Positions 18,940 through 61,309 of a stretch of 64,000 nt of DNA are shown one piece after another. The position numbers and the translations under genes are program-made. How positions within the stretch are numbered: position 1 is the first letter of the stretch; each line of letters starts with the position of its first letter. Location: contig NW_027362773.1 of assembly GCF_046119375.1 (NCBI RefSeq), positions 213,838,001 through 213,902,000 of the forward strand, in the 5' to 3' direction. The notes below the pieces were generated by a model, which worked only from the letters and a program-made list of their open reading frames with translations, was not told the origin of the DNA and ran no database searches. The stretch comes from Phyllobates terribilis (taxonomy: Eukaryota).

Positions 18940-18946
18940 ATGTTAG
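18940..18946 (+). CDS. Candidate upstream coding micro-exon (ATG TTA G) of the PKD1L gene
   Basis: gccgccATGTTAG|gtaagg; splices in frame to the acceptor at 26554 (ctgtag|TGTGG), giving MLVWIRMTILQ... Confidence 0.4.
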
Positions 18947-26565: not shown

Positions 26566-26836
26566 ATGACTATACTCCAAGATCTTTCCTTCTTTTGTCT
26601 ACTCTCAGTATTTTGTCAGCTGGGTAACTCTGGCGCTTTATTATGCCCAGGAAGGGGATTTTCATTTTCAGACTCCTGTTTTCGGTTTGTGGAGCAAAGG
26701 ACTGATTTTTGGGGTGCAAGAAGGTCCTGTGGAGCATGCGGAGGGCACCTGGCCAATGTATACAATGACAACTTGGCACCTCTGGCACAACAGATAAATG
26801 AGACATCACGCTGGTGGGTCAACCAGAATGATCTAG
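26566..26836 (+). CDS. PKD1L3: PKD1L exon: signal peptide and N-half of the C-type lectin
   Basis: MTILQDLSFFCLLSVFCQLGNSG...CPGRGFSFSDSCFRF...FWGARRSCGACGGHLA...WWVNQNDL|gtgaga (phase 1). Confidence 0.88.
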
Positions 26837-29800
26837 GTGAGAGTTACTTATTTTTATGCTCTGTATGAAGGGTTCCAGCTGATTCCTGGTATTGGGATGA
26901 TATGCACCTGTGGTCGCTTTCTAGAAGGGACACAGCAGAAATCTATGTGCTTGCCATCAATGTAGCCAATTTTTAGTTTAACAAATTTCAGGAACAAATT
27001 TGCAGCATGTGAATTCACCATTTTTGCAGAAATTTCCATAACTGAAAATCGGTTCCGTTCAAGTAAATGGAGTTATTTCAGATGAATGCATGAAAATCTG
27101 CAATGTGTGAACTTAATTTAAAGGTTGCATCCACACTGGTAAAATGAGGGCAAACCCTAATATTGGACCCGTGCTACAGAATAACCTATTCTATGAGTAA
27201 GGGAAAGTCCACAGGACCAATGTCTCCACGTACGTGGAAAATGGACCGAATACTCTGATCAGACTTTAATCAGAGTTTGATCAGTTTTTCCCGGACGTGA
27301 AGAGGTAAAAAAAAGTTTCTCCATTCTGACAAACCGTGAAAGTCATCCGAGTGTGGTCCGATGTTTTTCAAGGAACCGTAGACTTTCATTGCCGATTTTG
27401 ATCCGACCCCTCGTATCAAAATCGGACATGTCTCTGATTTTTTCTGCGGACCACTCGGACTAAGGAAAAAATCGGACAGGTGCACAGCCACATAGAATAT
27501 CATAGCTACGAGCGCTATCCCTGGATAGCACTCATCCAATAAAATCGTGTGCACTGAAATTCCCATTGATCGTATTTAATTTAATAGACATTTCTGCCAA
27601 TAATCCCAATATGCAATAAATGACTGTAAGACCTCATGCACGTGGCTGTATTACAGATTTGTCTGATGTGAATCTGTCTTACATGTGAATTTGCACGCCA
27701 AGCCCCCATTTGGGTAAACCCCATTGCATGCCATATTAGAGAGACATTCGGAGAATAAGAGTTGTACACAGATGCATAGTCTATATGAAGTGCCGTTAAA
27801 GAAGAATTATAGTTTCAGGCTATGTTCACACGTTGCATTTTTGCTGTGTATTTTTCTGCAGGCAAAACCTGCTCTCTTGGCAGTAAAGAAGCTGCTTCCA
27901 AAAAGCAGGTTTTGCTGCGTTTTTTTGCTGCGTTTTTCAGGATACCTAAGTTCAGCTATGCTTCCACCACAGAAGCATGAACACAGGTCATCAATGCAAG
28001 ACATATGTGAAGCCATAACATAAAACCATTTTTAGAAAAAAGGGCAATTTGATCAAATTATTTAGTGGAAAAAGATTTATGTCTGAAAGTAACTATTCTG
28101 AACAAAAAAGTTCATATGAGTTCATAAAAAAATACAAAACTATTTAGATTTGAGAGTCCTCAGTGGTTGATACCTTTTAATGGCTAACTGAAAAGATGGT
28201 AACAAATTGCAAGCTTTCAAGACTACTCAGGTCTCTTCATCAGGCATAGTATACCACAAAATCTGAAGAGTCACATATTTATACACAATAAGACACACAA
28301 AAAATGCAATAGTGTGTCTTATTGTGTATAAATATGTGACTCTTCAGATTTTGTGGTATACTATGCCTGATGAAGAGACCTGAGTAGTCTCAAAAGCTTG
28401 CAATTTGTTACCATCTTTTCAGTTAGCCATTAAAAGGTATCAACCACTGAGGACTCTCACATCTAAATATTTTTCGATCTACTGGCTAACACGGTACAAG
28501 AATATATATTTTCGCTATAAAAAAATACACAATTACAAATGTAACAGCGGAGGGAGGTGAATTGGTCAGGAATAGTTTACCTAAGACATTGGCAGAGCAT
28601 TGAGTTTGTAGGATACTGTTTACTTTCACATATTGGTCGGCCCTTAAGTTGGTCAAGTATTGTTCAGTTTCACACCTTGGTCAGCAAATGTTTACTTTAA
28701 CACATATCACTAATTTAATTAAACTGTACTAATCCTAATTTCCCTTCTCAGGTGACGATACCAAGACATTATGGTTGAAACTTGGGAAAAAAACAAAAAT
28801 ATATCGGTTTCACATACTGCTGTACCTGCTTTTTTCTACTAAAAATGCAGCAAAACCTGATACCAGCAATTTTTGCTACTTTTTTTGCACTTACCCATTG
28901 CTTTCTATGGGTGAAAAAGCGCTGCAAAAACACTGAAAGAATTGACCTGCTACAGTTTTAAAAAACGCAGCAGTTTTCCAATTCAGTCAGGAAAAAAAAA
29001 ACAATGTGTCTGCATGAAATTTCTGAAATCTCATGGAACAGAGATCCAGCATGCATACCCTGCTCCATTCAACCCCAATCTGGGGTTCCCAGTGGTCACA
29101 CCCCAGCGATCAGCAAGTTATCCCTATCCAAAGTATAGGGAATAACTTTTTCCTGTTCTTTTTTGTTGGGAGGTGGGAATAACCCATTAACTATTAGGGT
29201 GAATTCACTCCTTTTCACTTATATGGGAGAGAGTTTGCAGTACTAATAACAGCAGTGTATGGGAGAGAGTTTGCAGTGCTAATAACAGCAATGTATGGAG
29301 CGGTGCTGCTTCTGGTCTTTGACGGACTTAGATGAATCATCAATATTAAAGTCCTGGAAAACTCTTTTAATGAGAGTGCGAGAGAGAATTTTACAACACC
29401 AAAGTTCGGGTCCTCAGTGACTTCAATGGGGTTCGGGTTCTGGTTCAAGTTCGGGTACACTTCTGGTACCCGAACCAATTTTGGATTAAAGTTCGGACGA
29501 ACCCGAACATCCACTGCTCTGCTCATCCCTAGTTGTTACGCTTCTAAAAATGTTAACAGGTTGTAACCTGGTTGTGTTTCCCTCCACAGTTTACAATCCC
29601 AGGGATAGAGACATCTTGCTTCAGATGTTGTGTCCGGTTTTAACACATAATGCGGAGATACAGTCTGCACCGTGTCTGCAACCAAACGGCTTCATCTGCC
29701 AGACAGGTAAGAAAACAGGGATGACGTGAAGACATTTCTGATATCTGCCTTGGAGAGTCTTGACGATAAAACCAAAGAGGGACAGTTCAGATAAAGTTGA

Positions 29801-32800
29801 CATTACCCATCTTTCTTTTTGCAGAAGGGTCTCGCTGCCAAATGGAGAGACATCAGAATGTTACCCGGTTTACAGTACGAAGAGATATAAAAGTGAGTAA
29901 CACAACTAAATATCCATATTAGAAGATCGGTGGATGCTCCTATTTTTAATCCATGGTATTTGGCAATATATGCATTGAGAGTGGCAGGGTAAGCTTTATT
30001 TGGGGCAATGACAGGCGTAATTTCAGGTGACTTTTCAGAATAAGCTATTGTGTGTATATATGAGGAATAACTATTTTTGCACATTATATGACTTGTATCC
30101 TGCAATTTTGCCTGTTTTCCCATCTGCAGGCGCTATCTCTAATTTTTAGTTGTCTCTGAGCTACTGGGTGCAGATTAGCTACTTTGGTGTCTCCCATACA
30201 CAGCACACACAGAAATGAGGGATTCCTGCTCCCCTGTCTCTATGTAGCACATGTTGAGAAGCAGTAGATGCATAAAGAAAATTATCCAGCTGTACTGTGT
30301 AGTGTAGCTGTGCTGTGGTGAGGCAAACACTTTGTAGAAAATAGCAGCATCATGGAGGACATCACAAAATTCTACTGAGCAGTGTAGCTATGATTCCTGT
30401 CCTCTGGTGAAATAACACATGTGAAAAGAACAGCAACATGGACATAAGGAGGATATTATGTTGTAGTACTCAGCAGTGTAGTTGTGCATCCAGCTCTGGG
30501 GTGAGATAAACACTTGCTAGAAAGCAGCAATAGCATGGACATATGGAAGACATTATATTACAATACGGAGCAGTGTAGCCGTGAATGTAGTCCTGTGGTG
30601 AAATAAAACACATACTAGAAAGTAGCAGCATGGATATAAGGAAGACATTCTATTGCAACACTAAGCAGTGTAGTTGTAAATCCAGCTCTTACTTAGTAAA
30701 TAGCAGCAATCCTCTGCTTCTTGATCTCTTCCTCACCAATTCAGAGGCTTTAATATGCAGTTTAAATCTGATTCCCCAGTGATCAGATTGATTTTTAGCA
30801 GTATTGCAGAGTGAATGGTGAGTTGAGAAGGCAGGAGTAAGGGGAAGCATAGCCTGATAAGTAGGGAAAGAAGCAGATTTCTTTGATAAGGTATATTATA
30901 AAGATTCTAATAATCGCTTGTACTATTGATTTATTCAAAGTTTGTTGAAACTACAGCAACCATTGAATTATGAAATAGACAAGGGCTGCACGTGTATAAT
31001 ACAGATTGCCATTGTGCAATGATTTCCCAGTTTATGAGCTGGATCACTAGTAGCCAGAAGAAGAGACAAAGAGGAACATAGGATAAAGTGAGGACATACA
31101 GGTGCATCTCACTAAGTTAGAATATCATCAAAAAGTTAATTTATTTCAGTTCTTCAATACAAAAAGAAAAACTCATATATTATATAGAGTCATTACAGAG
31201 TGATCTATTTCAAGTGTTTATCTCTGTTAATGTTGATGATTATGGCTTACAGCCAATGAAAACACAAAAGTCATTATCTCAGTAAATTAAAATAATTAAT
31301 AAAAACACATGGAAAGGCTTCCTAAGCATTTAAAAAGGTCCCTTAGTCTGTTTCAGTAGGCTCCACAATCATGGGGAAGACTGCTGACTTGACAGATGTC
31401 CAGAAGGCAGCCATTGATGCACTCCACAAGGTCCCAGAGTTCCAATTTTCATTTGGAAATCAAGGTCCCAGGGTCTGGAGGAAGAGTGGAGAGGCCACAA
31501 TCCAAGCTGCTGGAGGTCTAGTGTGAAGTTTCCACAATCAGTGATGGTTTGGGGAGCCATGTCATCTGCTGGTGTAGGTCCACTGTGTTTTATCAACACC
31601 AAAGTCAGCGCAGCCGTCTACCAGGAAATTTTAGAGCACTTCATGCTTCCCTCTGCCAACAAGCTTTTTGGAGATGGAAATGTCATTCTCCAGCAGGAGT
31701 TGGCACCTGTCCACACTGCCAAAAGTACCAATACCTGGTTTACACACAACAGTAACACTGTGCTTGATTGGCAGCAAACTCGTCTGACCTTAACCCCATA
31801 GAGAATCTATTATAGAGAATCTATGGGATATTGTCAAGAGGAATATGAGAGACACCAGACTCAACAATGCAGACGAGCTGAAGGCTGCTATCAAAGCAAC
31901 CTGGGCTTCCATAGCACCTCAGCAGGGCCACAGGCTGATCGCCTCCATGCCACGCCGCATTGATGCAGTAAATGATGCAAAAGGAGCCCCAACCAAGTAT
32001 TGAGGGCATTTACTGAACATATATTTCAGTAGGACAACATTTCATATTTTAAAAACATTTTTCAAGCTGTTGTTATAAAGTATTCTAATTTACTGAGATA
32101 ATGACTTTTGTGTTTTCATTGGCTGTAAGCCATAATCATCAACATTAACAGAAATAAACACTTGAAATAGATCACTCTGTAATGACTCTATATAATATAT
32201 GAATTTCACTTTTTGTATTGAAGAACTGAAATAAATTAACTTTTTGATAATATACTAGTTTAGTGAGATGCACCTATATGTGAGTCCATTGGATTAAGAT
32301 GACATAGGTTACTTTTCCAGAAGTAATACAGAGATGGTGGGAATCTGGAACGCAAGACACCTTTTTATCTCGGTGGGGTATGATTACTCCTTGTGAAGAC
32401 CGCCAGGCTAATGTGGGGAGACTTGTAGTCCAGGGCTCTCTGAGAAAAAGAGTATTCAAATTAGCTCCCCTCCAAGAAGAAGAAAGCTGGCTCTATGGTG
32501 CCACCTATAGACGTCAATGTCTGGACCTTTAACGAATCTTGCAACATGACTTGGGATATTTAGCCAAAGCAAAAGAAAAGACAAAGACCTTGATCTGAAG
32601 GTTCCATGTATAAAATGTGTTTCTTTCCTTCCGTCTCATCAGAGTCACATCTTTACTGGGAGAAGAAAGAGATCCGTGGAGTCTAGTCAAGATGTTCCTG
32701 GTAAGACATTTTTCTGTCCTTTACTTGATGCATTACCTTCAGATCTGTTTCCCCCTAGTGATAAATTCTGATTTGTTTGTGCCTCATTCTTTTAGATCTA

Positions 32801-35800
32801 CTGGATATGGCTCGTCAACTTTCCAACACCACGACGATGGCAGCAAACAATATATCTGTAGGTATCACACATTACTTATGATTCTTCTCTAGTTTTGGAG
32901 TGAGTGTCCATGTCCTGTAGTGAGACCTGTGCTCAAAGTCCAGCACCGTGCAGCTGGATTGGCATTCACCAGAGAACACCAGAATTGGCAGCTCCACCAT
33001 TGGCACCCATTCTTTGCACAGATGTGAGCAGGTTCACGCTGAGCAAATGTGGCCTACGTGAAAGAGTCTGGAAACACTGTGGTGAACGTTATGCTGCCTG
33101 CAACACCATCCAGCATGACTGGTTTGGAAACGGGTCATTGATGGTCTGCACGAGCCTTCATGTGATAGCCAACTTTGCCTTGACTACTGTTAGGTGCCAA
33201 GATTAAATTCTCAGAGCCATCGTCTGTCCAAGTGCAGTGGGTCCTGGGTTCCTCTTGGTACAGGAAAATGTACGGCCTCAGGCAATTCCTGGATGATTGG
33301 TACCATTGACTGACCGTCATGTTCCCCAGACCAGAATCTAATTGAGAATCTTTGGGGTATTGTGTATCAGGGAATCTGACAACGCCAAGTTGTACCACAG
33401 ACTGTCAAGGAGCCAGTGATTCCCCGATGAAGCTCTGGGAGGGGATCCCCCAGGACACCATCCTTCATCTCATTAGACACATGCCCAGACGTAGCATATG
33501 GGGGTCATACTCACCATTAAGTACCATTATGTGTTGTCGAGAATGCATACAGATCACATTATGAGTTGCCGTGATGAAATTCACACAAATTGGATCCGCC
33601 TATTATTGAATTTTTTTTTTTTTCATTTTTGGGGTGATTTGGAATTCTGTCGTCAATTGGTTGATGATCTTCTTTCCATTGACCGCTGGTAGCTAGGAAT
33701 GGCCTATGCCATCAGAAGCACCAACCAGCCAGTCTGCGTGGTCAGGAAAATTAGGGTACATCTACATGGGAATGATAGATTATCTGCTGCATGTCTGCTG
33801 AGATTTGTAGTTTAGATTGAACACCAAGATACTGGGCCAGAGCAGCAAATTGAATCCTCGAGTGCAGCAAAACTTACCCCCGACTCTGCCCACCATCATC
33901 ATAAAGCATAACGCTATCTGGATCTGACACGTGAAAAGAGTCAGAACATTTACTTTGCCCGAAAAGCAACTGAGGTTATGTAAAAACGAAAACCAGTTCT
34001 TGCATGTCAATCTTGGGCATAGATGGATTTGTTAATGTTTGTTGCCTGTTACCAATAAGACTTAAATTCTCACAATACAGGACATTCTCATCCATCTCAA
34101 TTTTATGATGCAAGATGAAGAGGAGCCAAACAAAACTGATCTGGTGAGATGACCTTACCTACAATTACCCTATGTTATATTTTTTACAGATATCTGCCTC
34201 TGTTCATAGCTAAGTATCAGCACTGTACCTCCTAAAATAATGGTATAAAAAGTGTTCAAAAAGTTGTAAAATGGAACAAAAAAAATCGTTTTATCTCAAT
34301 AGGTAAAATAAATAAGTTTTCACCCAGCTCTACTAACAGAACAACAAAACAAAGTTATGGCTCTCAGATTTCTTTGGCAGAGATCACAACATGATGCAAG
34401 TGATTGGAATCGACCCACAACTTCGAAAACCAAGCAAGTCACAAAAAATCAACTGGTTATAACCTTGCGGGTCGTAATGTCAACCCATTCACTTGCATTG
34501 TTCTGACCCCAATCCTCATATTTGGAGGATGCATTGTGTATGAATTTTACCATACTATATATGGATTACTTGGGCCTAGAACAGGGATGTCAAACTCAAA
34601 TACACAGACGGCCGAAATTAAAAACTGAGACAAAGTCGCGGGCCGACCATGATATTTATTAAAAAAAATATCTACAATTGAGGAAGTTTTTCCTTATCAC
34701 CTAATATAACGATGAAACTTTTGGTATGGAAACTAAGTTAATGTTGTCCCATGAACAAAGTACATTTAGTTAATAGATCTTAGAATAAAATATTGGAATA
34801 ATATAATATGCTATCTAAGAGCAGTAAAAAGCTTACGGCCCAATGGCCTATTTTAAATATGTACGGTAATAACAAAGGATAAAAACCTTGAATTAATTAA
34901 TAATAAAGGTAATAAAGTAGGATGCCAACAAAAGTGACGCCAAACAAAGTATGATATCCCCACAGAGAATTCCTCTACTGTACCCTCCACATGCATATAT
35001 GATGACCCTACTGGATCCCCCTCAAACCTCCCAACAAAGTATGATGTCCCAACAGTGATCCTCACATAGTCCTCCATACAGTATAATGACCCCACATAGT
35101 CCTCCATACAGAATAATGGGCTCCACATAGTCCTCCATACAGTATAATGGCCCCACATAGTCCTCCATACAGTATAATGGCCCCACATAGTCCTCCATAC
35201 AGAAAAATGGGCCCACATAGTCATCCATACAGTATAATGGCCCCGCATAGTCCTCCATACAGTATAATGGACCCTACATAGTCCTCCATACAGAATAATG
35301 GGCTCCACATAGTCCTCCATACAGTATAATGCCCCCATATAGTCCTCCATACAGAATAATGGGCCCACATAGTCATCCATACAGTATAATGGCCCCACAT
35401 AGTCCTCCATACAGTATAATGGGCCCCACATAGTCTTCCATACAGAATAATGGGCTCCACATAGTCCTCCATACAGTATAATGGCCCCACATAGTCCTCC
35501 ATACGGTATAATGACCCCACATAGTCCTCCATACAGTATAATGACCCCACATAGTCCTCCATATAGTATAATGACCCCACATAGTCCAACATACAGTATA
35601 ATGGCCCCACATAGTCCTCCATACGGTATAATGACCCCACATAGTCCTCCATACAGAATAATGGTTCCACATAGTCCTCCATACAGTATAATGACCCCAC
35701 ATAGTCCTCCATACAGTATAATGACCCCACATAGTCCTCCATACAGAATAATGGTTCCACATAGTCCTCCATACAGGATAATGAGCCCCACATAGTCCAG

Positions 35801-53800: not shown

Positions 53801-55146
53801 TCTGAACAGTCACAGACACACTCAATTTTTTTTTTTTGCGGGGGGGGATACCAAAAGGTTAATAAGACGCGTATTTGTACAGTCTGACTGAGGAAAAAAA
53901 AATACTGGATTTAGATAAAAAAAAAAAAAGGATTTTTCCTGGCCCCTGAGACCGGGGGATAAATCGAGCAATTTGACCAGCAGGAGCACACAGGACTGTA
54001 ATGCAGTGTTTGTTGGTATAACCACTGCATCTCCTATACAGCCTGCCTGCCTGATATCTGGGATGGATATTAGTCCTGAGAAGGACTGTTTGTTTGATTT
54101 GGCAGGCTTTAGAGACCCTACACTAACTATTTTGGAGTATAAATCTCTCCTTAGCTCAGCAGCACTGACCCTACACTGGCTGATCCGGAGCGACTGTGTC
54201 CAAGATGGCGGCGCCCGGTTTTAAATATTCGAGGTGACGCTGTGCGGCCAGCCAATCACTGTAATGCCCACAAACAACATGGCTGCGGCATTACATTGAC
54301 TGGCTGGCAATCCCTGTATGTTCATTGGCTCTGTAAAGAGCGCCAAACGTGCAGGATGGAGACCCGAGCTTCCGCCCGAGTAACCCGGAAATGCTCGGTG
54401 CTCGCCGAACATCCCGAGTAGTGAGATGCTCGGGCGAGTACCGAGCAGTGTCGAGCATCCTCGCTCAACACTAAAGAGTTGCTAAAAATAAGTGAATCCT
54501 TCTCTGACAGATTTGGCCACGTCTTACATAGTCACCCATTTATCATGGTATTAAAGACCAATATTTATTGAGTTGGTGTGAGTAGATTGTCAGGACCTGG
54601 TTCATCAGCCACGCCTATAGTTCCTGGCTGTTGAACGGTAGACCTGAGAATCATTTCCTATCTCCTCTATTTTTGATTAGCCGGCATGGCTCGACTTCGT
54701 CGTTGTTGTGTGAGACACATGTGAGATCGCACCAGGCTGGCTAATCAAAGGATCAGTCTCAGATCCCAAAAGATTACCAGCATAGCCAATGGACAGTGTC
54801 CTGTGAATCAATTTGCACCAAAATGTAACATCCTATTCTATGAACCAACAATGTACAAAGCAATGGCTGGATTATAAACTTTTATTACTTTTTAAAAAAC
54901 TTTTTAAAGTCTTTTGTGATTTCCAGGTTGTGGGATTTGCAGTTTTCTTTGCTTTGATCTTAAAGAAGGTAGATGAAGATGAAGAGGAACTTCTGGATAC
55001 AGAATTGGGGATAGCAGGTTCGTTCGTCTGTTCTACTTTTTAGATTGATCATTTCAGCTTTGATCATTGGGTATGTAAGCACGTGTTATACAATATTCCC
55101 TGAAATCATATAAAACCAAAACAGACCTCACCCAAAAAAAATAAAA

Positions 55147-55206
<60 letters not shown>

Positions 55207-56681
55207 TACAGACCAAAAGTTTGGACACACCTCATTTAAAGATTTTTCTGTGATTTCATGACTATGAAAATTGTACATTCACACTATGAATTAACACATG
55301 TGGAATTATATACTTAACAAAAAAGTGTGACACAACTGAAAATATGTTTTATATTCTAGGTTCTTCAAAGTAGCCACCTTTTCCTTTGATGACTGCTTTG
55401 CACACTCTTGGCATTCTCTTGATGAGCTTCAAGAGGTAGTCACCGGAAATGGTCTTCCAACAATCTTGAACGAGTTCCCAGAGATGCTTAGCACTTGTTG
55501 GCCCTTTTGCCTACACTCTGTGGTCCAGCTCACCCCAAACCATCTCGATTGGGTTCAGGTCTGGTGACTGTGGAGGCCTGGAGGTGTGTTTGGGGTCATT
55601 GTCCTGTTGAAAAATAAATGCTGGTCCAACTAAACGCAAACCGGATGGAATAGCATGCCGCTGCAAGATGCTGTGGTAGCCATGCTGGTTCAGTATGCCT
55701 TCAATTTTGAATAAATCCCCAACAGTGTAACCAGCAAAGCACCCCCACACCATCACACCTCCTCCTCCATGCTTCACGGTGGGAACCAGGCATGTAGAGT
55801 CCATCCGTTCACCTTTTCTGCGTCGCACAAAGACACGGTGGTTGGAACCAAAGATCTCAAATTTGTACTCATCAGACCAAAGAACAGATTTCTACTGGTC
55901 TAATGTCCATTCCTTGTGTTCTTTGGCCCAAACAAGTCTCTTCTGCTTGTTGCCTGCCCTTAGCAGTGGTTTCCTAGCAGCTATTTTACCATGAAGGCCT
56001 GCTGCACAAAGTCTCCTCTTAACAGTTGTTGTAGAGATGTGTCTGCTGCTAGAACTCTGTGTGGCATTGACCAAGTGTCTAATCTGAGCTGCTGTTAACC
56101 TGCGATTTCTGAGGCTGGTGAGTCGGATAAACTTATCCTCAGAAGCAGAGGTGACTCTTGGTCTTCCTTTCCTGGGGCGGTCCTCATGTGATCCAGTTTC
56201 TTTGTAGCGCTTGATGGTTTTTGCAACTGCACTTGGGGACACTTTCAAAGTTTTCCCAATTTTTCGGACTGACTGACCTTCATTTATTAAAGTAATGATG
56301 GTCACTCGTTTTTCTTTACTTAGTTGCTTTTTTCTTGCCATAATACAAATTCTAACAGTCTATTCAGTAGGACTATCAGCTGTGTATCCACCTGACTTCT
56401 GCACAACACAACTGATGGTCCCAACCCCATTTATAAGGCAAGATATCCCACTTATTAAACCCAACAGGGCACAACTGTGAAATGAAAACCATTTCCGGTG
56501 ACTACCTCTTGAAGCTCATCAAGAGAATGCCAAGAGTGTGCAAAGCAGTCATCAAAGCAAAAAGTGGCTACTTTGTGATGCCTTCAGTGTGAATGTACAA
56601 TTTTCATAGTCATGAAAATACAGAAAAATCTTTAAATGAGAAGGTGTGTCCAAACTTTTTGTCTGTACTGTATATATATAG

Positions 56682-56732
<51 letters not shown>

Positions 56733-57308
56733 GATATATATATGTAGATATATGTATATTATAGAATTGCTGCATTTGCATAACTTTAGGTGCCTATACA
56801 CCTTGGATTGCAAATGTAACAACCATTTCTCACCACATCCAATAAACACATGAATGCTCGGCTATGCATTTGTAGCATATCTACTATGTTCTGTTTTGAT
56901 GCGAATCCCAGAAGACATGTAGTAATTAGTGATGATCGAGCATATTCGTTGCTCGAGATTTACGAGCATGCTCGGGCGAGCGCCTATTATCTTCAGCATG
57001 CTCTAGCGTGAAGTTTTCATCGCTCCGTGAATATGATATGCAACTGATTGACAGCTTTAATACATGTGAGGAATGCTGGAAAACCAGGCATTCCTCACAT
57101 GTATTAAAGCTGTCAAACACTCGCAAATCATGCTCACGGAGCGACGAAAACTTAACGCCAGAGCATGCTGAGGATAATAGGTTCTCGCCCGAGCATGCTC
57201 TTAAATCTCGAGCAACGAGCATGCTCGATCATCACTAGTAGTAATGTAATGTAATTGTTGCTTTACATTGCAGATGAATATCAGACCTGTGATGAGACGG
57301 CACTGTGA
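26566..57308 (+). CDS. PKD1L3: Polycystin-1-like protein (PKD1L3 by synteny, PKD1L2-like TM region), about 1111 aa, lacking the TRPP channel module
   Basis: 23 exons with consistent splice phases, total 3336 nt (a multiple of 3), no internal stop. Domain order: signal peptide, CTL, GAIN/GPS (CLCNHLS), TM1, PLAT, TM2-5. Head-to-head with DHODH as in mammals. The family call is firm; the L3 versus L2 symbol and the last exon are less certain. Confidence 0.75.
28141..28469. mobile_element. Penelope-like inverted terminal-repeat pair (158-bp arms, 13-bp spacer), each arm with a hammerhead-like core
   Basis: Arms 28141-28298 and 28312-28469 with about 3 mismatches. CTGATGA-a-GAGAC-ctgagta-GTCTY-RAAAGCTT at 28367-28399 (+) and 28243-28211 (-). 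Confidence 0.75.
29590..29706 (+). CDS. PKD1L3: PKD1L exon: C-half of the C-type lectin
   Basis: cacag|VYNPRDRDILLQMLCPVL...SAPCLQPNGFICQT|gtaaga; 117 nt, phase 1-1. Confidence 0.85.
29825..29892 (+). CDS. PKD1L3: PKD1L exon (EGSRCQMERHQNVTRFTVRRDIK)
   Basis: ctttctttttgcag|...AAA|gtgagt; 68 nt, phase 1-0, required to restore frame. Confidence 0.75.
31099..32276 (+). mobile_element. Internally deleted Tc1 element
   Basis: TA|CAGGTGCATCTC...GAGATGCACCTA|TA; long TIRs; retains KFPQSVMVWGAMSSAGVGPL and the NPIEN region but lacks the DNA-binding domain. Confidence 0.9.
32643..32700 (+). CDS. PKD1L3: PKD1L exon with furin-type site (SHIFTGRRKRSVESSQDVP)
   Basis: catcag|...CCTG|gtaaga; 58 nt, phase 0-1. 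Confidence 0.75.
32796..32857 (+). CDS. PKD1L3: PKD1L exon (DLLDMARQLSNTTTMAANNIS)
   Basis: cttttag|...TCT|gtaggt; 62 nt, phase 1-0. Confidence 0.72.
32900..33660 (+). mobile_element. Degraded Tc1 fragment (family of 8253-9811, opposite strand)
   Basis: Remnants resembling FTDESRFTLS, ERYAACNTIQHD and WEGIPQDTI. Confidence 0.75.
34081..34143 (+). CDS. PKD1L3: PKD1L exon (DILIHLNFMMQDEEEPNKTDL)
   Basis: tacag|...CTG|gtgaga; 63 nt, phase 0-0 (symmetric, could be skipped). Confidence 0.6.
34582..35833. mobile_element. hAT-type MITE carrying a minisatellite
   Basis: CAGGGATGTCAAACTC...GAGTTTGACATG; near-TSD GCCTAGAA / GTCTAGAA. Confidence 0.75.
35060..35790. repeat. About 30-bp minisatellite (CACATAGTCCTCCATACAGTATAATGGCCC)n
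   Basis: About 24 copies, directly visible. Confidence 0.95.
35929..36096 (+). CDS. PKD1L3: PKD1L exon, GAIN-A region
   Basis: cacag|VDTLFLLNELSVW...SWTQSE|gtagat; 168 nt. Confidence 0.82.
36183..36301 (+). CDS. PKD1L3: PKD1L exon, GAIN region
   Basis: ttcag|IQSMTNSALGIMNEYQ...SFSVLLS|gtaacg; 119 nt, phase 0-2. Confidence 0.85.
36748..36871 (+). CDS. PKD1L3: PKD1L exon, GAIN region
   Basis: tccag|VNTSNINKYTLSYPDPVAEVVFPSRTALQSVL...VQVQ|gtaaga; 124 nt; resembles recalled PKD1L3 SYTLGHPAPVRLGFPS. Confidence 0.87.
37357..38094. mobile_element. hAT-type MITE
   Basis: CAGGCCTGCACAAC...GTTGTGCACTCCTG; near-TSD CGTTAGAG / CATTAGAG. Confidence 0.75.
38100..39318 (-). mobile_element. Degraded Tc1 element
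   Basis: Remnants GGGGIMFWAGI and WSPSCSDLSLIENLWSILK; terminal ...ataatttacagcactgtg|TA. Confidence 0.75.
39578..40485. mobile_element. MITE containing a 16-bp tandem array
   Basis: Termini resembling GGCTGCATTCA / TGAATGTAGCC; (AGAGCA[G/A]GTCCTCTTC)n at 39675-40230, about 34 copies. Confidence 0.75.
41038..41166 (+). CDS. PKD1L3: PKD1L exon, GAIN region
   Basis: tacag|MMSFSQNPY...ISGTVASLSV...HNLSDNFQ|gtcggt; 129 nt. Confidence 0.87.
42259..42466 (+). CDS. PKD1L3: PKD1L exon, GAIN region
   Basis: aacag|IFLPRTASS...LDLYHG...QSAL|gtatga; 208 nt, phase 0-1. Confidence 0.85.
42714..42895 (+). CDS. PKD1L3: PKD1L exon, start of the GPS motif
   Basis: tctag|DSYTWILTPD...QCAFWNANLQNWSSDGCL|gtacag; 182 nt. 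Confidence 0.93.
43082..45415. mobile_element. hAT (Charlie-like) non-autonomous element with internal palindrome and minisatellite
   Basis: TIR CAGGGGTCTCAAAC; TSD TTCTAGAC on both sides; palindrome of about 300 bp at 43156-43460. Confidence 0.9.
43575..45050. repeat. 30-31-bp G-rich minisatellite (GGGGACCTGGATGGGGCACATAGCCACAAGA)n
   Basis: Roughly 45-50 copies; source of the spurious long ORFs at 43451-44885. Confidence 0.95.
45424..46532. mobile_element. Second related hAT element, adjacent and inverted
   Basis: CAAGGGTCTCAAAC...TTTTGAGACCCTT; TSD TTCTAGAC on both sides; degenerate CCTGTAATAATGTCCC repeats at 45790-46320. Confidence 0.85.
46602..46832 (+). CDS. PKD1L3: PKD1L exon, GPS cleavage site and TM1
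   Basis: tgcag|VGPQTTVTKVQCLCNHLSVFGSSFLVLP...NPVIVVLV...WARRMD..MQ|gtagtc; 231 nt. Confidence 0.96.
47398..47499 (+). CDS. PKD1L3: PKD1L exon, start of the PLAT domain
   Basis: cccag|NRLIIPRDSDPCALYRYLITVCTGHRRGAGTSAK|gtaaga; 102 nt. Confidence 0.95.
47580..47758 (+). CDS. PKD1L3: PKD1L exon, PLAT domain
   Basis: gacag|VCLSLCGAE...VFRSGNVDVF...LGELKSITLNHDGSGAHKSW|gtaaga; 179 nt. Confidence 0.95.
47985..48131 (+). CDS. PKD1L3: PKD1L exon, end of the PLAT domain
   Basis: catag|YVTQVTVQD...WHFLCNTWLS...ELRSF|gtaacc; 147 nt. Confidence 0.95.
48430..48629 (+). CDS. PKD1L3: PKD1L exon, TM2
   Basis: gcaag|RNIFLQKT...DEHIWISI...FTRVQRVSCCMCLLLC..INLMFW|gtgagt; 200 nt. Confidence 0.95.
48709..48917 (+). 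CDS. PKD1L3: PKD1L exon, TM3 and basic loop
   Basis: cgcag|GNFILTWKDIMIAFESAILMFPVNLLIIYIFRNTRPK...VLK|gtgaga; 209 nt. Confidence 0.95.
49009..49150 (+). CDS. PKD1L3: PKD1L exon, cytoplasmic loop
   Basis: attag|DLSETVRTLSQTSRN...KQLTPG|gtgagt; 142 nt. Confidence 0.88.
50170..50392 (+). CDS. PKD1L3: PKD1L exon, cytoplasmic loop
   Basis: tctag|LSSSAP...FCAHYVFRKLKKVSQDL...LPSQ|gtaaga; 223 nt. Confidence 0.88.
50482..50689 (+). CDS. PKD1L3: PKD1L exon, TM4-TM5
   Basis: tgcag|...KKRLPWWFLFIGWSIL...FTMMYGFLYGKDSSIRWIVSM...FILQPLK|gtcagt; 208 nt. Confidence 0.95.
50788..54473. mobile_element. Non-autonomous hAT element (3686 bp) with transposase remnants
   Basis: TIR TAGTGTTGAGC; perfect 8-bp TSD AAGAGTTG (50780-50787 and 54474-54481); BED finger AICTTCH...MIRHMSAKH on the minus strand; subterminal GCTCG/CGAGC repeats. 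Confidence 0.93.
52830..53830. repeat. About 150-bp tandem repeat, roughly 6.5 copies, inside the hAT element
   Basis: The same text recurs at 53041 and 53341, and nearly at 53641; the ORF track shows a 50-aa period. Confidence 0.92.
54927..55017 (+). CDS. PKD1L3: PKD1L exon, end of TM5 and acidic linker
   Basis: tccag|VVGFAVFFALILKKVDEDEEELLDTELGIA|gttcgt; 91 nt, phase 0-1. Confidence 0.9.
55204..56670 (-). mobile_element. Tc1 transposon between (TA)n tracts; defective transposase
   Basis: CAGTACAGACCAAAAGTTTGGACACACCT TIRs; MARKKQLSKEKRVTII...; QQDNDPKHTSR joined directly to PPQSPDLNPIE (internal deletion). Confidence 0.93.
56927..57237. mobile_element. Palindromic hAT MITE (311 bp)
   Basis: TIR TAGTGATGATCGAGCAT; perfect TSD GTAGTAAT (56919-56926 and 57238-57245); fully fold-back. 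Confidence 0.92.
57274..57308 (+). CDS. PKD1L3: Probable terminal coding exon of the PKD1L gene (DEYQTCDETAL*)
   Basis: gctttacattgcag| acceptor; phase 1 gives 11 aa then TGA; AATAAA at 57584-57589. No homology support. Confidence 0.45.
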
Positions 57309-57799
57309 TGGATTTCCAGGCTCTCTGCACTCTCTCTCATTATATGCACCGGATCTACCTGGATCTTCTTTCATTTTATTGGGACAGATACATTCTGCAG
57401 CGCCGTATACAAATTTTACAAAGCTCCATTTCTTTTTTTCTCATGGTGTGTTTTATTTAGGTTTGTATTATGTATATAGGCAAACTATGGTATTGCCTTT
57501 ATGACCAGACACAGTTTTTTTTATTGCTTTTATATCAGTTAAAAAGTGAAGGATTTCAATTTTTTTTCTTCTTTTTCCATTAAAATAAATATATATTACT
57601 AGCAAATATTATTGACCTCCCTTTTGTAAAATTGCATTCCGCCAATTCTTGTTATAGGAAAATGCAGCTTATATGTAGCTTATAGAAGTGCAGAAGTTTT
57701 GTGCACCCCACAAGTGATGGAGAAAGCATTCACACTCGAGGTTTGCACTCCCAGACCAATAGAGGTGCTCTTCTGCCATTTCAAGATGGCAGAAGTTCA

Positions 57800-58182: not shown

Positions 58183-59607
58183 TCATGTCCACAGGGAAAT
58201 CGGCACCCAATTATGCAGATTTTGCTACAGTTTTCCTTTTTGCCTTTAAAAATAAAATCACCTTAGAAATTCCCTTTTTTCCAAAAATACTAAGTGTATA
58301 AAAGAAGTAACCTGTCCATTTTTCTGGCATTTTCTTCTAGGAAGCCAATCTAAAATGCTAGGAAGTCTATCAATATTATACAATAAAAGTTAATGACAAG
58401 GCTACAAAAATGCCGCAAAGACGCCGGGGCGACTTTTTGAGTATTTTGTAAGCGTTTTTTTTAAGCGTTTTCGCCTCATAAAACACTAGACTTTATTCAT
58501 GCTGAATGGGTTTAAAAAAATATCGGAAAATCGTCCAGAAAATAAAGCCATATAAAAACAGTTACAAAATGTTAACAAAATGCATCAGGAAAAAGTTGGC
58601 AAAAAACAACAACATTTCAGTACAAAAAAAGTCCACATTGAAAGAACAATTTTCCACTTGAAAAACTTGTTATATTTCACCATCTCAAAAATACTCTGTG
58701 TGAACCTACTCTTGGGCTATGTTCACTCAGAGTTTTGCAAATCTGATGATTTTTTTCAAGCAAAAACAGCTAGGAAACAATTCTTTTTTTGGTAAGTTTT
58801 TTGGAGGCGTTTTAATTTTCCTTAAGCAATGTTTACATGCAGCATTTTTGCTGTGTTTTTTTTTCTGCAGCCAAAACCTGCTCTCCTGGCAGGAAAAAAA
58901 ACACTGCAATCAAAATTTTTGCAGTGTTTTTGATGCATTTTTTGCATAGTATTTGGTTGGGGATTACATATGTGCTTTGTGCACAGTATATGTTTAATGT
59001 ATTTAATTTTATTCACCAAAAACGCTTCAAAAATGTGGTAAAAAATACTGTTGTGTTTTTTTGCAACGCTTTTTTACTTTCTCATTGCGTCACGTGTTTT
59101 TGAAATATATATATTTTTTAAGACGATTTTGAAGAGGATCCGCTCCAAATATCTCCATGTGAACATAGCCTTGGGTTTTTGTTTTTTTTTGTTAGCATCT
59201 GTCATCCCTTGAGAGGACCAGACAGAGGACCCTCTTCTGTGACATCTTCATAAGTCGTCACTGTCTTTAACGTTGGACAAAATGGTTTCCATACATCTTT
59301 CTCAGAAAAAGTATCGCACTAGGGAACAGTGGAACAGAATTTTTAACAATTTAGATTTTTTTATTTTATTTTAGGATTGAACAGACTTGTCTAGATGACG
59401 CATTACAGGCAATGTCATAATTATCTATATAACTTTTTATTATAATTTGTGTCTCTCTCCTGTAAAGTATGTTATACACTAATTTATGGAAACAATAACA
59501 TTTATTATGTGTCAATTTAATTAAAAATATAATAGAATGTAATACTATAAGAACGATGGTTTATGTGCATTGCTTCAGATCTGTATCACAGGCTGCTATG
59601 TATACAC

Positions 59608-60016
59608 TAGGCCTCATTTATCAAAACTATCCGGATGAAAAGCTGTCTTTGTTGTCCATAGCAACCAATCATGGCTCAGCTTTCATTTCATAAACTGCTC
59701 TGGGAAAATGAAAGCTGAGCCGTGATTGGTTGCTATAGGAAACAAAGACAAGTTTTCACTTAATCCTTATAAATGAGCCCGCCGTATATTCAGAGGAGTT
59801 AGACAATACTTGTACACCATGTTATGACTCTTTTCAGCCCTGCACTAGACATAACGCAGTAATGTAATCAAAACTGTCTTTGATGCCCATAACAACCAAT
59901 CACAGCGCAGCTTTCATTTTACCTGAGCACTTTAAGAAATGAAAGCTGTGCTCTGATTGGTTGCTATGGGCAACAGACACAGTACCTCTTTTTAACTGTA
60001 TTAATAAATGAGGCCT
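59608..60016. mobile_element. MITE with two internal fold-back units
   Basis: TA|GGCCTCATTTATCA...TAATAAATGAGGCC|TA; two CAACCAATCA..CAGCTTTCATTT..AAATGAAAGCTG..TGATTGGTTG units. Confidence 0.7.
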
Positions 60017-61309
60017 AGTGTCTCAGTTTTGCCTGAAAATGTTCTTATAGGAATGAGGCCATAATGCCATGTGCGCATAGCTTTTTTTTAGGAGTCTTTT
60101 ACAGCAGGTTTTCTTTAAAAAAAAAACGCTTAAAAATAGCTAAAAAAAAAATCTTGAAAGACTTCTATTAATTTCTATTGAAAAACAATTTGCTGTTCAT
60201 ATGTTCAGTCTTTGGAATATTTCTTATTAAATTCACATTTACACATTTACGTTACAATAGAAGTCAATGGGAAAGCTAAAAAAAAACAACACAAAAATGC
60301 CTGTTTTTATTTTGAAGGGTTTTGTAAAAAATTTTGAGGCGTCTAAAAAAACCTCTAGCGCTTAATTCATTAATGGATTTAAAAAAAAATGTCCCAGAAA
60401 TTGTCTAAAAAAGTTTTTTTATTTTTTAACGTTAACGTGTTTTCAGAAAACGCTTCTGGAAATGTTAACAAATCGCTAAAATATAAAAAATTCAGGACAA
60501 AAAATGGCTAGCAAAATCCAACATGGAAGGAGCAAGATCTGAAGCAATTTCAGGAAAAACTTGTAATTTTTGACTGCCTAAAAAAAATTAAAAATACTGT
60601 ATGAACATCCCCTAACTGTTCTTATACTGGTTGGTCATGGATGATTTTCTTAAGGTTATAAAGGGGATTACCGGTTTCAGAAAACCTCTGTCATCTTTGT
60701 CCGCTGCTCCCCGTGTCTGTTATTATCTGCAGCGCTGACGTCACATCAACAGCGCTGCAGTCAATCAGTGACGTTAGAGCGACTCGTGCCATCAACTCGG
60801 GCAGAGCTGCTGATTAGCTGCAGCGCTGCAGACAATAACACATACTAGAATCAGCGGTGGAGACAAAGAGCTGGACCAGGGGAGGATGATGTTTTTTCAA
60901 GCAAACTACAGCTGAGGGAGAAAGGCTTTACGAAACCAGAATATTCTTTAATGGATGAAAAAAATCTTCCTGGAGTTTGTATGTCCTCCCATAGTTTACA
61001 TAGAGATATTCAGGTTTCCTCCGTGCTCCAAAACCAGATCTGAAACTCAGTAATGTGATGTCATTTATGTCTGTATTTAAGCTGTATTTTTCTGTAATGA
61101 TCTCTACCTATTTATCCACAATAAAAGCCATTTGTAGTGACCACAATGGTGTACGTGTGCTCAGCTGTGTATAGCTAGAGACCATGCACCTGTCCGGCTG
61201 GGTGTGCCGCCTTGTTTATTTGATGGGGAGGGGAGATATTTTCGCTCCTCCATCATTTACAGCTTACTGTACAACAACAGGCTTGAAATCTCAGTTCTGT
61301 CCAAGAACC

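What the first reader, a model, noticed from the sequence alone, without database searches (positions are those of the whole stretch)
26566..61100. Intact polycystin-1-family gene that stops before its ion-channel module
Seen: 22 exons splice into one stop-free frame through CTL, GAIN/GPS, TM1, PLAT and TM2-5, ending VVGFAVFFALILKKVDEDEEE at 55017. The roughly 6 kb before the next gene's first exon is almost all transposon or repeat. The three candidate phase-1 acceptors I tested (57274, 59196, 59375) each reach a stop within 12 codons. Established: PKD1L2 and PKD1L3 have 11 TMs, the last six plus the TOP domain forming the TRPP-like part that co-assembles with PKD2-family subunits. Inference: this is a 5-TM channel-less polycystin. 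The clean frame, intact HL|S GPS and conserved splice sites argue against a long-dead pseudogene. It could be a lectin-gated signalling receptor or a decoy partner.
Basis: partly seen in the sequence, partly recalled or inferred. Interest (0 to 1): 0.85.

Follow-up and report, generated by a model that had tools for sequence, protein, structure and literature searches.

The report
Conserved channel-less polycystin-1-like gene
This frog gene really does encode only the front half of a polycystin-1-like membrane protein, with five membrane spans and no ion-channel part; it is an old, conserved and expressed gene that fish, amphibians and lizards share, not a broken copy.

Summary
The gene has 23 coding exons, not 22, spanning 26566-57308 on the + strand, all with GT..AG introns. 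It gives one 1111-aa frame. This exon is conserved in frogs, a newt and a caecilian. A cDNA contig from a related frog uses it and runs on into a collinear 3'UTR.

A profile of the channel half finds nothing in the window (best E 0.3). The same profile finds 10 exons (E 4e-41 to 1e-7) in a frog PKD1L3 locus.

The next gene, at 61310, is the full-length PKD1L3. The order DHODH / short gene / PKD1L3 recurs in Rhinoderma, where IST1 follows. In Podarcis the short gene is also followed directly by PKD1L3. In seabass only the short gene lies between DHODH and IST1.

The short genes form one clade (100/100) that is sister to PKD1L3 (93/94). dN/dS is 0.18-0.20, and about 0.04 over TM4-5 plus tail.

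England et al. 2017 described the fish member as a "partial pkd1l3" remnant. RefSeq calls these genes "polycystin-1-like protein 2". So this is a new member of a known but neglected kind. Its function is inferred, not shown. This scan had not found the same thing on other DNA.

The parts
26566..26836 (+). Exon 1: ATG, signal peptide and first half of the C-type-lectin-like head
   Evidence: Rhinoderma genomic DNA has an equivalent open exon with the same ATG. The only Pfam hit is a weak UL45 C-type-lectin-like match, E 0.031.
29590..29892 (+). Exons 2 (29590-29706) and 3 (29825-29892): second half of the lectin-like head (...CLQPNGFICQ) and a linker
32643..34143 (+). Exons 4 (32643-32700), 5 (32796-32857) and 6 (34081-34143). 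Exon 4 carries the furin-like site RRKR|S (32661-32675).
   Evidence: The R-x-[KR]-R motif is conserved in most members of the short-gene clade, teleosts included.
35929..42466 (+). Exons 7-11 (35929-36096, 36183-36301, 36748-36871, 41038-41166, 42259-42466): extracellular stalk. In the orthologue model this is a helical part followed by a beta-sandwich, GAIN-like.
   Evidence: Secondary structure of the model for Rhinoderma P0002, pLDDT 65-84 over residues 90-430.
42714..42895 (+). Exon 12: first half of the GPS motif (CAFWNANLQNWSSDGC)
   Evidence: Pfam GPS E 4.1e-5.
46602..46832 (+). Exon 13: second half of the GPS with CLCNHL|S (HLS at 46647-46655), the conserved stalk SVFGSSFLVLPVQIDVTRTA, and TM1 (46743-46799)
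   Evidence: H-L-[ST] is invariant in all 23 short-clade sequences aligned.
47398..48131 (+). Exons 14-16 (47398-47499, 47580-47758, 47985-48131): cytoplasmic PLAT/LH2 domain
   Evidence: Pfam PLAT E 7e-4 and 0.18 on single exons and 2.6e-14 on orthologue P0002. The fold search matches lipoxygenase PLAT domains at about 1.9 A rmsd.
48430..48917 (+). Exons 17 (48430-48629, TM2 at 48533-48589) and 18 (48709-48917, TM3 at 48735-48791)
49009..50392 (+). Exons 19 (49009-49150) and 20 (50170-50392): long cytoplasmic loop
50482..50689 (+). Exon 21: TM4 (50522-50584), an outer loop and the start of TM5 (...ILQPLK)
   Evidence: The intron position after ...KV is shared with PKD1L3.
54927..55017 (+). 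Exon 22: rest of TM5 and the acidic cytoplasmic tail (VVGFAVFFALILKKVDEDEEELLDTELGIA); donor CAG|GTTCGT, phase 1
   Evidence: A 151-nt RNA contig in run X2 lies on 54925-55012 without mismatch, and its other 63 nt hang off upstream. The flanking intron bins have depth 0.
57274..57308 (+). Exon 23: terminal coding exon (D)EYQTCDETAL plus TGA (57306-57308); acceptor tttacattgcag|AT
   Evidence: It matches the C-termini of frog, newt and caecilian orthologues. The cross-species cDNA L005 joins 55017 to 57274. dN/dS over exons 22-23 is 0.047.
57309..57610 (+). 3'UTR, with overlapping ATTAAA/AATAAA signals at 57579-57589. The 3' end is approximate.
   Evidence: The L005 3'UTR is collinear up to 57567. 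An X1 RNA contig lies on 57289-57439 with 0 mismatches and depth falls to 0 after 57516. RNA runs hold 13-47% of the sampled words. Signals.
55200..56765 (-). Tc1/mariner-type transposon inside the last intron, not part of the gene's product; flanked by (AT)n at 55147-55203 and (TA)n at 56671-56763
   Evidence: HTH_Tnp_Tc3_2 E 2.3e-13 and a weak DDE_3 hit. Very high contig depth. Tandem repeats.
61310..61609 (+). First coding exon of the next gene, the full-length PKD1L3 orthologue (context)
   Evidence: 80% identical to residues 1-100 of Rhinoderma PKD1L3 P0200, which is 1837 aa and carries Polycystin_dom and PKD_channel. Pfam Lectin_C E 6e-5.
11705..18957 (-). DHODH exons, head to head with the short gene (context, synteny anchor)
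   Evidence: The DHODH part of cDNA L005 maps to 11705-16474 and, weakly, to 18854-18957. Pfam DHO_dh on the neighbouring gene in L001, L002 and L005.

Best explanation
This is the frog member of an old vertebrate gene that encodes only the N-terminal module of a PKD1L3-like polycystin.

The protein has a signal peptide, a short C-type-lectin-like head, a furin-like R-x-K-R site, and a GAIN-like stalk with an intact GPS (HL|S). TM1 is followed by a cytoplasmic PLAT domain, TM2-TM5 and a 30-residue acidic cytoplasmic tail.

The gene lies between DHODH and the full-length PKD1L3. It is the tandem sister of PKD1L3, was cut off after the TM5 exon, and acquired its own short terminal exon.

Shown here:
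- The architecture.
- The absence of any channel exon in the window.
- The conserved stop exon.
- Transcription and splicing to that exon, seen as a full cDNA in a related frog and as thin exon-limited RNA in this species.
- Purifying selection.
- Orthology with the fish 'partial pkd1l3'.

Inferred:
- Topology is N-out, C-in.
- The protein is probably cleaved at the GPS and perhaps at the furin site.
- It cannot contribute pore helices or a TOP domain to a TRPP-type tetramer. It must therefore act as a non-channel membrane receptor or regulator.
- Its PLAT domain would then be used for membrane or trafficking contacts.
- In amphibians the conserved C-terminal E-[ST]-x-[LIF] end looks like a class I PDZ ligand and could be used for scaffolding.
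For: - Gene model: 23 exons, one frame. All exon junctions agree with the cross-species cDNA L005, including 55017|57274 and the 3'UTR.
- Channel profile (551 positions, built from 23 full-length tails): best E 0.31 in the window, against 10 exons at E 4e-41 to 1e-7 in Rhinoderma PKD1L3. No remnants were found in the Rhinoderma, seabass or Podarcis short-gene loci.
- Orthologues of about 940-1170 aa with GPS and PLAT only.
- Every short protein ends 20-30 aa after TM5, whereas PKD1L2, PKD1L3 and lamprey proteins run on into TM6.
- Twelve of 13 amphibian C-termini end E-[ST]-x-[LIF].
- Synteny: DHODH / short gene / PKD1L3 / IST1 in Rhinoderma; short gene then PKD1L3 in Podarcis; DHODH / short gene / IST1 in seabass; DHODH next to the short gene in Polypterus.
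- Careful ML tree: short clade 100/100 with species-tree order inside, PKD1L3 clade 100/100, the two as sisters 93/94. The AU test rejects a tetrapod-only duplication (p 0.007).
- dN/dS is 0.185 against Rhinoderma (CI 0.157-0.227, dS 0.56) and 0.196 against L005. Over TM4-5 plus tail it is 0.04-0.05.
- Exon-limited RNA contigs in this species, with intron bins at zero depth.
- phmmer to solved polycystin-1: E 6e-40.
Against: - RNA support in this species is thin: single 151-nt contigs at depth about 2. The runs are only guessed to be RNA, and the 55017|57274 junction itself was seen only in a related species.
- Function is wholly inferred.
- Neither the lectin-like head nor the PDZ-like end is conserved across the whole clade. 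Fish and lizard tails differ, and Xenopus ends EAVI.
- The structure model is poor in the membrane part (mean pLDDT 57.8), so the count of five spans rests on hydropathy and homology to polycystin-1.
- The short+PKD1L3 sister node (93/94) is not strongly supported, and the invertebrate outgroups are long-branched.
- Two non-RefSeq models (Pelobates cultripes P0001, Phrynocephalus P0012) fuse the short gene to PKD1L3.
Confidence: 0.88

Rival explanations
1. It is a decaying remnant: a partial PKD1L3 copy on its way to being lost. This is how England et al. 2017 read the fish gene.
For: It lacks the domain that defines bona fide PKD proteins (PMC5318412). Squamate members evolve fast and partly lose Pfam GPS/PLAT hits. 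No short gene turned up in mammals, birds or turtles in my searches, whose sensitivity was limited.
Against: - The 1111-aa frame is open, with canonical splice sites.
- dN/dS is 0.18-0.20, and about 0.04 at the very end of the protein.
- The dedicated stop exon is conserved across Amphibia.
- One clade with species-tree order spans ray-finned fish to tetrapods. That implies retention since before those lineages split.
- The gene coexists with an intact PKD1L3 in frogs and lizards, so it is not that gene in decay.
Confidence: 0.03
2. It is an assembly or annotation artefact. On this reading the channel exons belong to this gene but are missing, misplaced or further downstream. Alternatively the 'short gene' and PKD1L3 are one transcription unit read through as a fusion.
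For: The two genes are on the same strand and only about 4 kb apart. Fused database models exist: P0001 of 2401 aa and P0012 of 2765 aa, each with two TM4-5 stretches.
Against: - The window has no gaps.
- The same layout and similar spacing occur in the independent Rhinoderma assembly: exon 22, then the stop exon about 2 kb on, then PKD1L3 about 2.8 kb further.
- Podarcis and seabass show the same layout.
- RefSeq keeps the two genes apart in many species.
- The cDNA contig ends with the stop exon and a 3'UTR.
- A head-to-tail fusion would place the PKD1L3 ectodomain in the cytoplasm after an odd number of spans. This last point is inference.
Confidence: 0.04
3. It is an alternative front-end cassette. 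Besides the short mRNA, exon 22 would sometimes splice over the stop exon and the first part of PKD1L3, directly to the PKD1L3 exon that follows its own TM5 exon. That would give an 11-TM chimera with a different ectodomain.
For: The intron positions around TM5 are shared. Both the exon-22 donor and the PKD1L3 post-TM5 exon are phase 1 (G|GN), so such a splice would be in frame.
Against: No read, contig or database model shows this junction. Teleosts keep the short gene with no PKD1L3 exons at all. The stop exon and tail are under strong constraint, so the short product is the selected one.
Confidence: 0.05

Closest known systems
Fish 'partial pkd1l3' (zebrafish ZDB-GENE-060810-132, 1083 aa; also spotted gar, stickleback, pufferfish, medaka): England et al. 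2017, PMC5318412
   Same: The domain content is lectin C-type, GPS and PLAT, with no polycystin cation-channel domain, and it lies next to dhodh. Teleost and bichir proteins of this kind fall in one clade (100/100) with the frog gene. Seabass has the same DHODH-adjacent position.
   Different: The paper read it as a remnant of pkd1l3 being lost in ray-finned fish and did not analyse it further. Here it coexists with a full PKD1L3 and is under purifying selection. In amphibians it also has a conserved stop exon and tail motif that fish lack.
[quoted passage not shown]
   Same: It is the tandem neighbour and the sister clade (93/94). It shares the N-terminal layout (lectin-like head, GPS, TM1, PLAT, TM2-5) and the intron positions around TM5.
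   Different: PKD1L3 continues into TM6-11 with the TOP domain and the pore (Pfam PF20519 and PF08016 in P0200). That fragment alone carries the channel activity with PKD2L1 (abstract of PMC8357825). The window gene has none of it.
PKD1L2 (the name RefSeq gives these short proteins)
   Same: Pairwise similarity is highest here: the TM4-5 query scores 270-286 against PKD1L2 and 93-162 against PKD1L3.
   Different: The tree places the short clade with PKD1L3, outside PKD1L2. PKD1L2 proteins have 11 TMs and a channel domain, and some also carry REJ (Pfam lists). The locus is the PKD1L3/DHODH one, not the PKD1L2 one.
Polycystin-1 C-terminal fragment with its stalk tethered agonist (PMC9171645) and adhesion GPCRs
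   Same: The GPS has an invariant HL|[ST], followed by a highly conserved stalk (S-x-FGSSF-x-V-x-P...) before TM1. Sequence homology to solved polycystin-1 is E 6e-40, and to the ADGRG6 GPS region E 3e-6.
   Different: In polycystin-1 the stalk is modelled to act through the TOP domain and pore loop on a C-tail that holds the G-protein activation motif. The short protein lacks all three. It has 5 spans, not 7 or 11.
Sea-urchin suREJ1/suREJ2 and the short human PKD1L2 form (the former from my own memory; the latter as stated in PMC5318412)
   Same: These are polycystin-1-family proteins without a channel half. suREJ1 also has lectin domains (recollection, not tested here).
   Different: They have different TM numbers, different lineages and no orthology. 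I did not compare them with tools.

Membership tests
Polycystin-1 (PKD1-like) family, N-terminal module | GPS motif with an HL|S/T cleavage site just before TM1 | tested here: met
   Pfam GPS E 4.1e-5 (exon 12) and 0.014 (exon 13), and 1.2e-10 in orthologue P0002. CLCNHL|S lies at 46635-46661 and is invariant in 23 short-clade sequences. Cleavage itself is not testable here.
Polycystin-1 (PKD1-like) family, N-terminal module | PLAT/LH2 domain in the first cytoplasmic loop after TM1 | tested here: met
   Pfam PLAT on exons 15 and 16 and E 2.6e-14 in P0002. The fold search matches lipoxygenase PLAT domains and polycystin-1 chains.
Polycystin-1 (PKD1-like) family, N-terminal module | Sequence homology to polycystin-1 across TM1-PLAT-TM2-5 | tested here: met
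   phmmer of P0002 against PDB: 6a70_B and 8z6f_A polycystin-1, E about 1e-39, two stretches.
Channel-forming PKD1-like proteins ('bona fide PKD' in the sense of PMC5318412) | Polycystin cation-channel domain (PF08016) with TM6-11 | tested here: not met
   A profile of 23 post-TM5 tails gives a best E of 0.31 over all six frames of the window. The control locus gave 10 exons at E 4e-41 to 1e-7. Orthologues carry no PF08016. The protein ends 30 aa after TM5.
Channel-forming PKD1-like proteins ('bona fide PKD' in the sense of PMC5318412) | TOP/polycystin domain (PF20519) between S1 and S2 | tested here: not met
   Same searches.
Short DHODH-adjacent PKD1L orthologue group (fish 'partial pkd1l3') | Position between DHODH and PKD1L3/IST1, head to head with DHODH | tested here: met
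   In the window, DHODH exons lie at 11705-16474 on the minus strand, the short gene at 26566-57308, and PKD1L3 exon 1 at 61310. The same order is seen in L001/L004, L002 and L003.
Short DHODH-adjacent PKD1L orthologue group (fish 'partial pkd1l3') | Falls inside the clade of short proteins, apart from PKD1L3 and PKD1L2 | tested here: met
   Clade support is 100/100. The nearest relative is Anomaloglossus at 92% identity. AU p 0.007 against a tetrapod-only duplication (the group was named after the tree was seen).
Short DHODH-adjacent PKD1L orthologue group (fish 'partial pkd1l3') | Ends 20-30 residues after TM5; in amphibians on a separate mini-exon ending E-[ST]-x-[LIF] | tested here: met
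C-type lectin domain (carbohydrate-binding) | Match to Pfam Lectin_C at the family threshold | tested here: not met
   Window exon 1 gives only UL45, E 0.031. The full-length short proteins P0153 and P0182 have no Lectin_C hit at E 0.001. The cysteine and WW pattern resembles the PKD1L3 head, which does hit Lectin_C (6e-5), so I call it lectin-like only.
C-type lectin domain (carbohydrate-binding) | Ca2+/sugar-binding EPN or QPD motif plus WND | tested here: not met
   Read directly from the 1111-aa product. The stretch between WWV and the last cysteines is short and holds none of these motifs. Which motifs matter is from my own knowledge.
Adhesion GPCR | Seven-transmembrane domain after the GAIN/GPS | tested here: not met
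   Five hydrophobic spans with a PLAT domain after the first. Homology is to polycystin-1, and only the GPS region matches ADGRG6.
Class I PDZ ligand | C-terminal x-[ST]-x-hydrophobic-COOH on a cytoplasmic tail | tested here: met
   The window ends ETAL. Twelve of 13 amphibian orthologues end E-[ST]-x-[LIF]. That the tail is cytoplasmic follows from 5 spans with the N-terminus outside (inference). Binding is not testable with these tools. The motif is not conserved in fish or lizards.

The most novel reading that the evidence does not exclude
The short gene is a third, non-channel functional class of vertebrate polycystin. On this reading it is a stand-alone GAIN/GPS-PLAT receptor, kept since before ray-finned and lobe-finned fishes split, that works without contributing to a TRPP pore. 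It might tune or traffic PKD2L1/PKD1L3-type complexes, or signal through its PLAT domain and PDZ-type tail. The 'partial pkd1l3' of fish would then be its orthologue, not a dying PKD1L3. A more exotic variant, which I rate at about 5%, is that exon 22 can also splice in frame to the PKD1L3 channel exons. That would make the two genes alternative front ends of one channel subunit.
Probability: 0.35. Interest if true: 0.7.

Novelty: new member of a known kind. Interest (0 to 1): 0.45.

Why it matters
Polycystin-1-like proteins are defined in the literature by their channel half, and the fish version of this gene was set aside as not bona fide. This locus shows three things. The channel-less form has its own conserved stop exon. 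It is constrained as strongly as ordinary genes. In amphibians and lizards it sits beside an intact PKD1L3.

That changes the reading from 'PKD1L3 being lost in fish' to 'an old tandem paralogue that fish kept while losing PKD1L3, and that I did not find in mammals'.

It offers a natural experiment on what the N-terminal module (GAIN/GPS, stalk, TM1-5, PLAT) does on its own. That question is relevant to how polycystin-1 signals in kidney disease. The gene is directly testable in Xenopus and zebrafish.

It also flags a naming problem: RefSeq's 'polycystin-1-like protein 2' label for these genes does not fit the synteny or the tree.

Tried and rejected
- **Channel exons in 55-64 kb.** tblastn with the fused model P0001 gave no hit past 50692. 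A 551-position profile run over all six frames found nothing.
- **Other candidate ends.** Short-query tblastn with orthologue tails found only 57261-57305.
- **RNA in this species.** It gave only two informative 151-nt contigs. The junction 55017|57274 itself was not seen in this species.
- **DNA of the closest relative.** Anomaloglossus P0169 could not be fetched because the file was too large. I used Rhinoderma and the cDNA contig instead.
- **Structure.** The AlphaFold model of P0002 with 24 sequences was weak (mean pLDDT 57.8; membrane part and tail below 50). The Foldseek PDB search returned mainly PLAT matches. I draw no conclusion on the 5-TM bundle or on a full GAIN fold from it.
- **Census in amniotes.** A search with the lizard protein returned only squamates and one frog. 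The method needs shared 5-mers, so the absence of birds, turtles and mammals is weak evidence.
- **First quick tree.** It left the three clades unresolved and a hemichordate nested in PKD1L2. I replaced it with a careful tree using lamprey and other outgroups.

Full report
**What is in the window.** The window has no gaps. DHODH exons lie on the minus strand at about 11.7-16.5 kb. The DHODH part of a related frog's cDNA maps there, and more weakly at 18854-18957.

Using frog orthologues found with one exon as guides, I scored every GT/AG pair around each tblastn block. This gave a model of 23 coding exons, all GT..AG, 3336 nt, with one open frame of 1111 aa and a TGA at 57306-57308.

Exon 22 (54927-55017) ends in phase 1 at CAG|GTTCGT.

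The product has these features:
- A signal peptide.
- A short cysteine-rich lectin-like head.
- An RRKR|S site.
- A long stalk.
- A GPS with CLCNHL|S.
- TM1.
- A PLAT domain.
- TM2 and TM3.
- A 170-residue loop.
- TM4 and TM5.
- A 30-residue acidic tail.

Pfam recognises GPS and PLAT even on single exons. The Rhinoderma orthologue matches solved polycystin-1 at E 6e-40.

**The end of the gene.** Short-query tblastn with the C-termini of orthologues found one place downstream of exon 22: 57261-57305, reading ...DEYQTCDETAL. This compares with DEYQTSDETAL in Rhinoderma and DDYQNSDETMF in Pelobates fuscus. The acceptor tttacattgcag|AT at 57274 is in phase with the exon-22 donor.

That stop is the real one.

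Frog, newt and caecilian proteins end in the same way. Twelve of 13 have E-[ST]-x-[LIF] as their last four residues.

A 5297-nt transcript contig from a related frog (L005, Logan, SRR32314942) holds an intron-free 1060-aa coding sequence. It maps exon by exon onto the window, joins 55017 to 57274, stops at the same place, and continues in a 3'UTR collinear with 57309-57567. ATTAAA and AATAAA overlap at 57579-57589.

In the window's own species the evidence is thin but consistent:
- One 151-nt contig lies on exon 22, with its other 63 nt hanging off at the acceptor side.
- One 151-nt contig lies on 57289-57439.
- Neither has a mismatch.
- All single-copy intron bins have zero depth.
- Several probable RNA runs hold 13-47% of the words of the last exon plus 3'UTR.

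**No channel half.** I cut the part after TM5 out of 23 full-length PKD1L3 and PKD1L2 proteins and built a 551-position profile. I ran it with all filters off against every open stretch of 12 or more codons in all six frames.

The best hit in the window has E 0.31, and the weak hits are scattered over both strands. In the Rhinoderma PKD1L3 locus the same profile finds ten collinear exons at E 4e-41 to 1e-7. That protein was among the 23, so the control is somewhat favourable. Nothing is found in the Rhinoderma, seabass or Podarcis short-gene loci either.

The region 55-61 kb holds a Tc1-type element, a further high-copy repeat, the terminal exon with its 3'UTR, and a 28-bp tandem array.

The next gene starts at 61310. 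Its first exon is 80% identical to residues 1-100 of Rhinoderma PKD1L3. That protein carries the polycystin and channel domains.

**It is a conserved gene, not a local accident.** Database proteins of about 940-1170 aa with GPS and PLAT but no channel domain exist in many lineages:
- Many frogs.
- A newt.
- A caecilian.
- Lacertid, agamid and phrynosomatid lizards.
- Bichirs.
- Teleosts.

All of them end 20-30 residues after TM5. PKD1L2, PKD1L3 and lamprey proteins continue into the loop and TM6.

Gene order is as follows:
- Rhinoderma: DHODH, short gene, PKD1L3, IST1.
- Podarcis: short gene, then PKD1L3.
- Seabass: DHODH, short gene, IST1, with no full-length gene.
- Polypterus: DHODH lies beside the short gene.

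The intron after ...KV inside TM5 and the next, phase-1 intron are shared with PKD1L3. The truncation therefore lies at an exon boundary, with a new last exon added.

**Phylogeny.** I built a careful maximum-likelihood tree of the shared region from the GPS to TM5: 53 rows, 620 columns, LG+C20.
- The short proteins are one clade (100/100) whose inner order follows the species tree: ray-finned fish, then lizards and amphibians.
- Tetrapod PKD1L3 is one clade (100/100).
- The two are sisters at 93/94.
- PKD1L2 and lamprey lie outside.

Forcing tetrapod short genes together with PKD1L3, to the exclusion of the fish short genes, costs 29.6 log-likelihood units (AU p 0.007). I named that group after seeing the tree.

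The simplest history is a tandem duplication before ray-finned and lobe-finned fishes split, followed by a single truncation. PKD1L3 was later lost in ray-finned fish, and the short gene was lost in lineages such as mammals. The losses are inferred from limited searches. That human has no gene between DHODH and PKD1L3 is my recollection.

The invertebrate outgroups have long branches, and the root of the three-clade group is not secure.

**Selection.**
- Nei-Gojobori dN/dS against the Rhinoderma genomic exons is 0.185 (bootstrap interval 0.157-0.227; dS 0.56; 1091 codons).
- It ranges from 0.33 in the lectin-like head to 0.04 in TM4-5 plus tail.
- Against the L005 cDNA it is 0.196 overall and 0.047 for exons 22-23.
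- The GPS H-L-[ST] and the following stalk are nearly invariant from teleosts to frogs. An R-x-[KR]-R site after the head is widely kept.

**Literature.** England et al. 2017 (PMC5318412) found a 1083-aa zebrafish protein with lectin, GPS and PLAT domains beside dhodh, and counterparts in other teleosts and gar. They called it a putative partial pkd1l3, judged it not bona fide, suggested the gene is being lost in ray-finned fish, and did not analyse it further. I found no paper on the tetrapod gene. RefSeq labels these proteins 'polycystin-1-like protein 2'. That label fits raw similarity but not synteny or the tree.

**How it probably works.** The architecture is shown; the rest is inference. 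Five spans with the N-terminus outside put PLAT, the long loop and the tail in the cytoplasm.

Without TM6-11 and the TOP domain, the protein cannot take the polycystin-1-like seat in a 1:3 TRPP tetramer. In PKD1L3 that fragment alone is enough for channel activity (abstract of PMC8357825).

The stalk-to-TOP-to-pore-loop relay proposed for polycystin-1 signalling (PMC9171645) is also unavailable. What remains is an ectodomain that is probably cleaved at the GPS, a conserved stalk, PLAT, and in amphibians a PDZ-type end. That points to a non-channel receptor, trafficking factor or regulator.

The head is lectin-like only. It falls below the Pfam threshold and I see no EPN/QPD or WND motif, so 'lectin-gated' is not supported.

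The AlphaFold model of the orthologue was too weak in the membrane part to add anything.

**Rivals.**
- Decay is contradicted by the constraint and the depth of conservation.
- An assembly artefact is contradicted by independent assemblies and the cDNA.
- Read-through fusions exist only as non-RefSeq models (P0001, P0012). They would be topologically odd.
- An in-frame splice from exon 22 to the PKD1L3 exon after TM5 is possible by phase. Nothing supports it, and teleosts, which have no PKD1L3 exons, show that it is not needed.

**Verdict.** The gene belongs to a known but neglected orthologue group. It is of moderate interest, mainly for the revised evolutionary reading and as a handle on what the polycystin N-terminal module does on its own.

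Noticed in passing
window 55200-56765 (minus strand ORFs 55514-55891 and 55895-56359): A Tc1/mariner-type transposon sits in the last intron. Its transposase frame is largely open (HTH_Tnp_Tc3_2 E 2e-13) and it is flanked by (AT)n and (TA)n. Summed contig depth in the RNA runs is 1e4-5e5, so the family is very abundant and probably transcribed.
   Followed up: partly
L005:1-1560 and window 18854-18957, 26672-26690: A transcript contig of a related frog joins DHODH cDNA and the short-gene cDNA head to head. The two 5' ends therefore overlap or share a bidirectional promoter. That transcript enters exon 1 internally, near window 26685, and its frame starts at an internal Met (MDFWGARRSC), as in the RefSeq Hyla and Leptodactylus models. 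Such an isoform would have no signal peptide. The window has Thr at that codon and a conserved upstream ATG with a signal peptide, as does Rhinoderma genomic DNA.
   Followed up: partly
window 32661-32675: An R-x-[KR]-R|S furin-like site lies between the lectin-like head and the stalk. It is conserved in most short-clade proteins from teleosts to frogs, which suggests the head is cut off or processed.
   Followed up: partly
window 57798-58183: A 28-bp tandem array of 13.7 copies (96% matches) lies just downstream of the short gene's 3'UTR.
   Followed up: no
window 61310-63968: The PKD1L3 orthologue starts with a lectin exon. About 1.4 kb later comes a roughly 326-codon open stretch rich in Q, D, E and K (62991-63968). 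I only confirmed that exon 1 is PKD1L3.
   Followed up: partly
window 43500-45200 and 35100-35800: Long tandem repeats inside introns 12 and 6 give open frames of more than 100 codons on both strands (PGWGT... and PHSPPYSIM... units). They are not exons of this gene.
   Followed up: no
L003 and proteins P0161, P0314, P0315: The squamate short genes evolve much faster than the others: the stem branch is 0.93 changes per site and lacertid-agamid identity is about 54%. They partly lose Pfam GPS/PLAT hits, yet keep HL|S and end in S-x-Q. This could mean relaxed or changed function in lizards.
   Followed up: no
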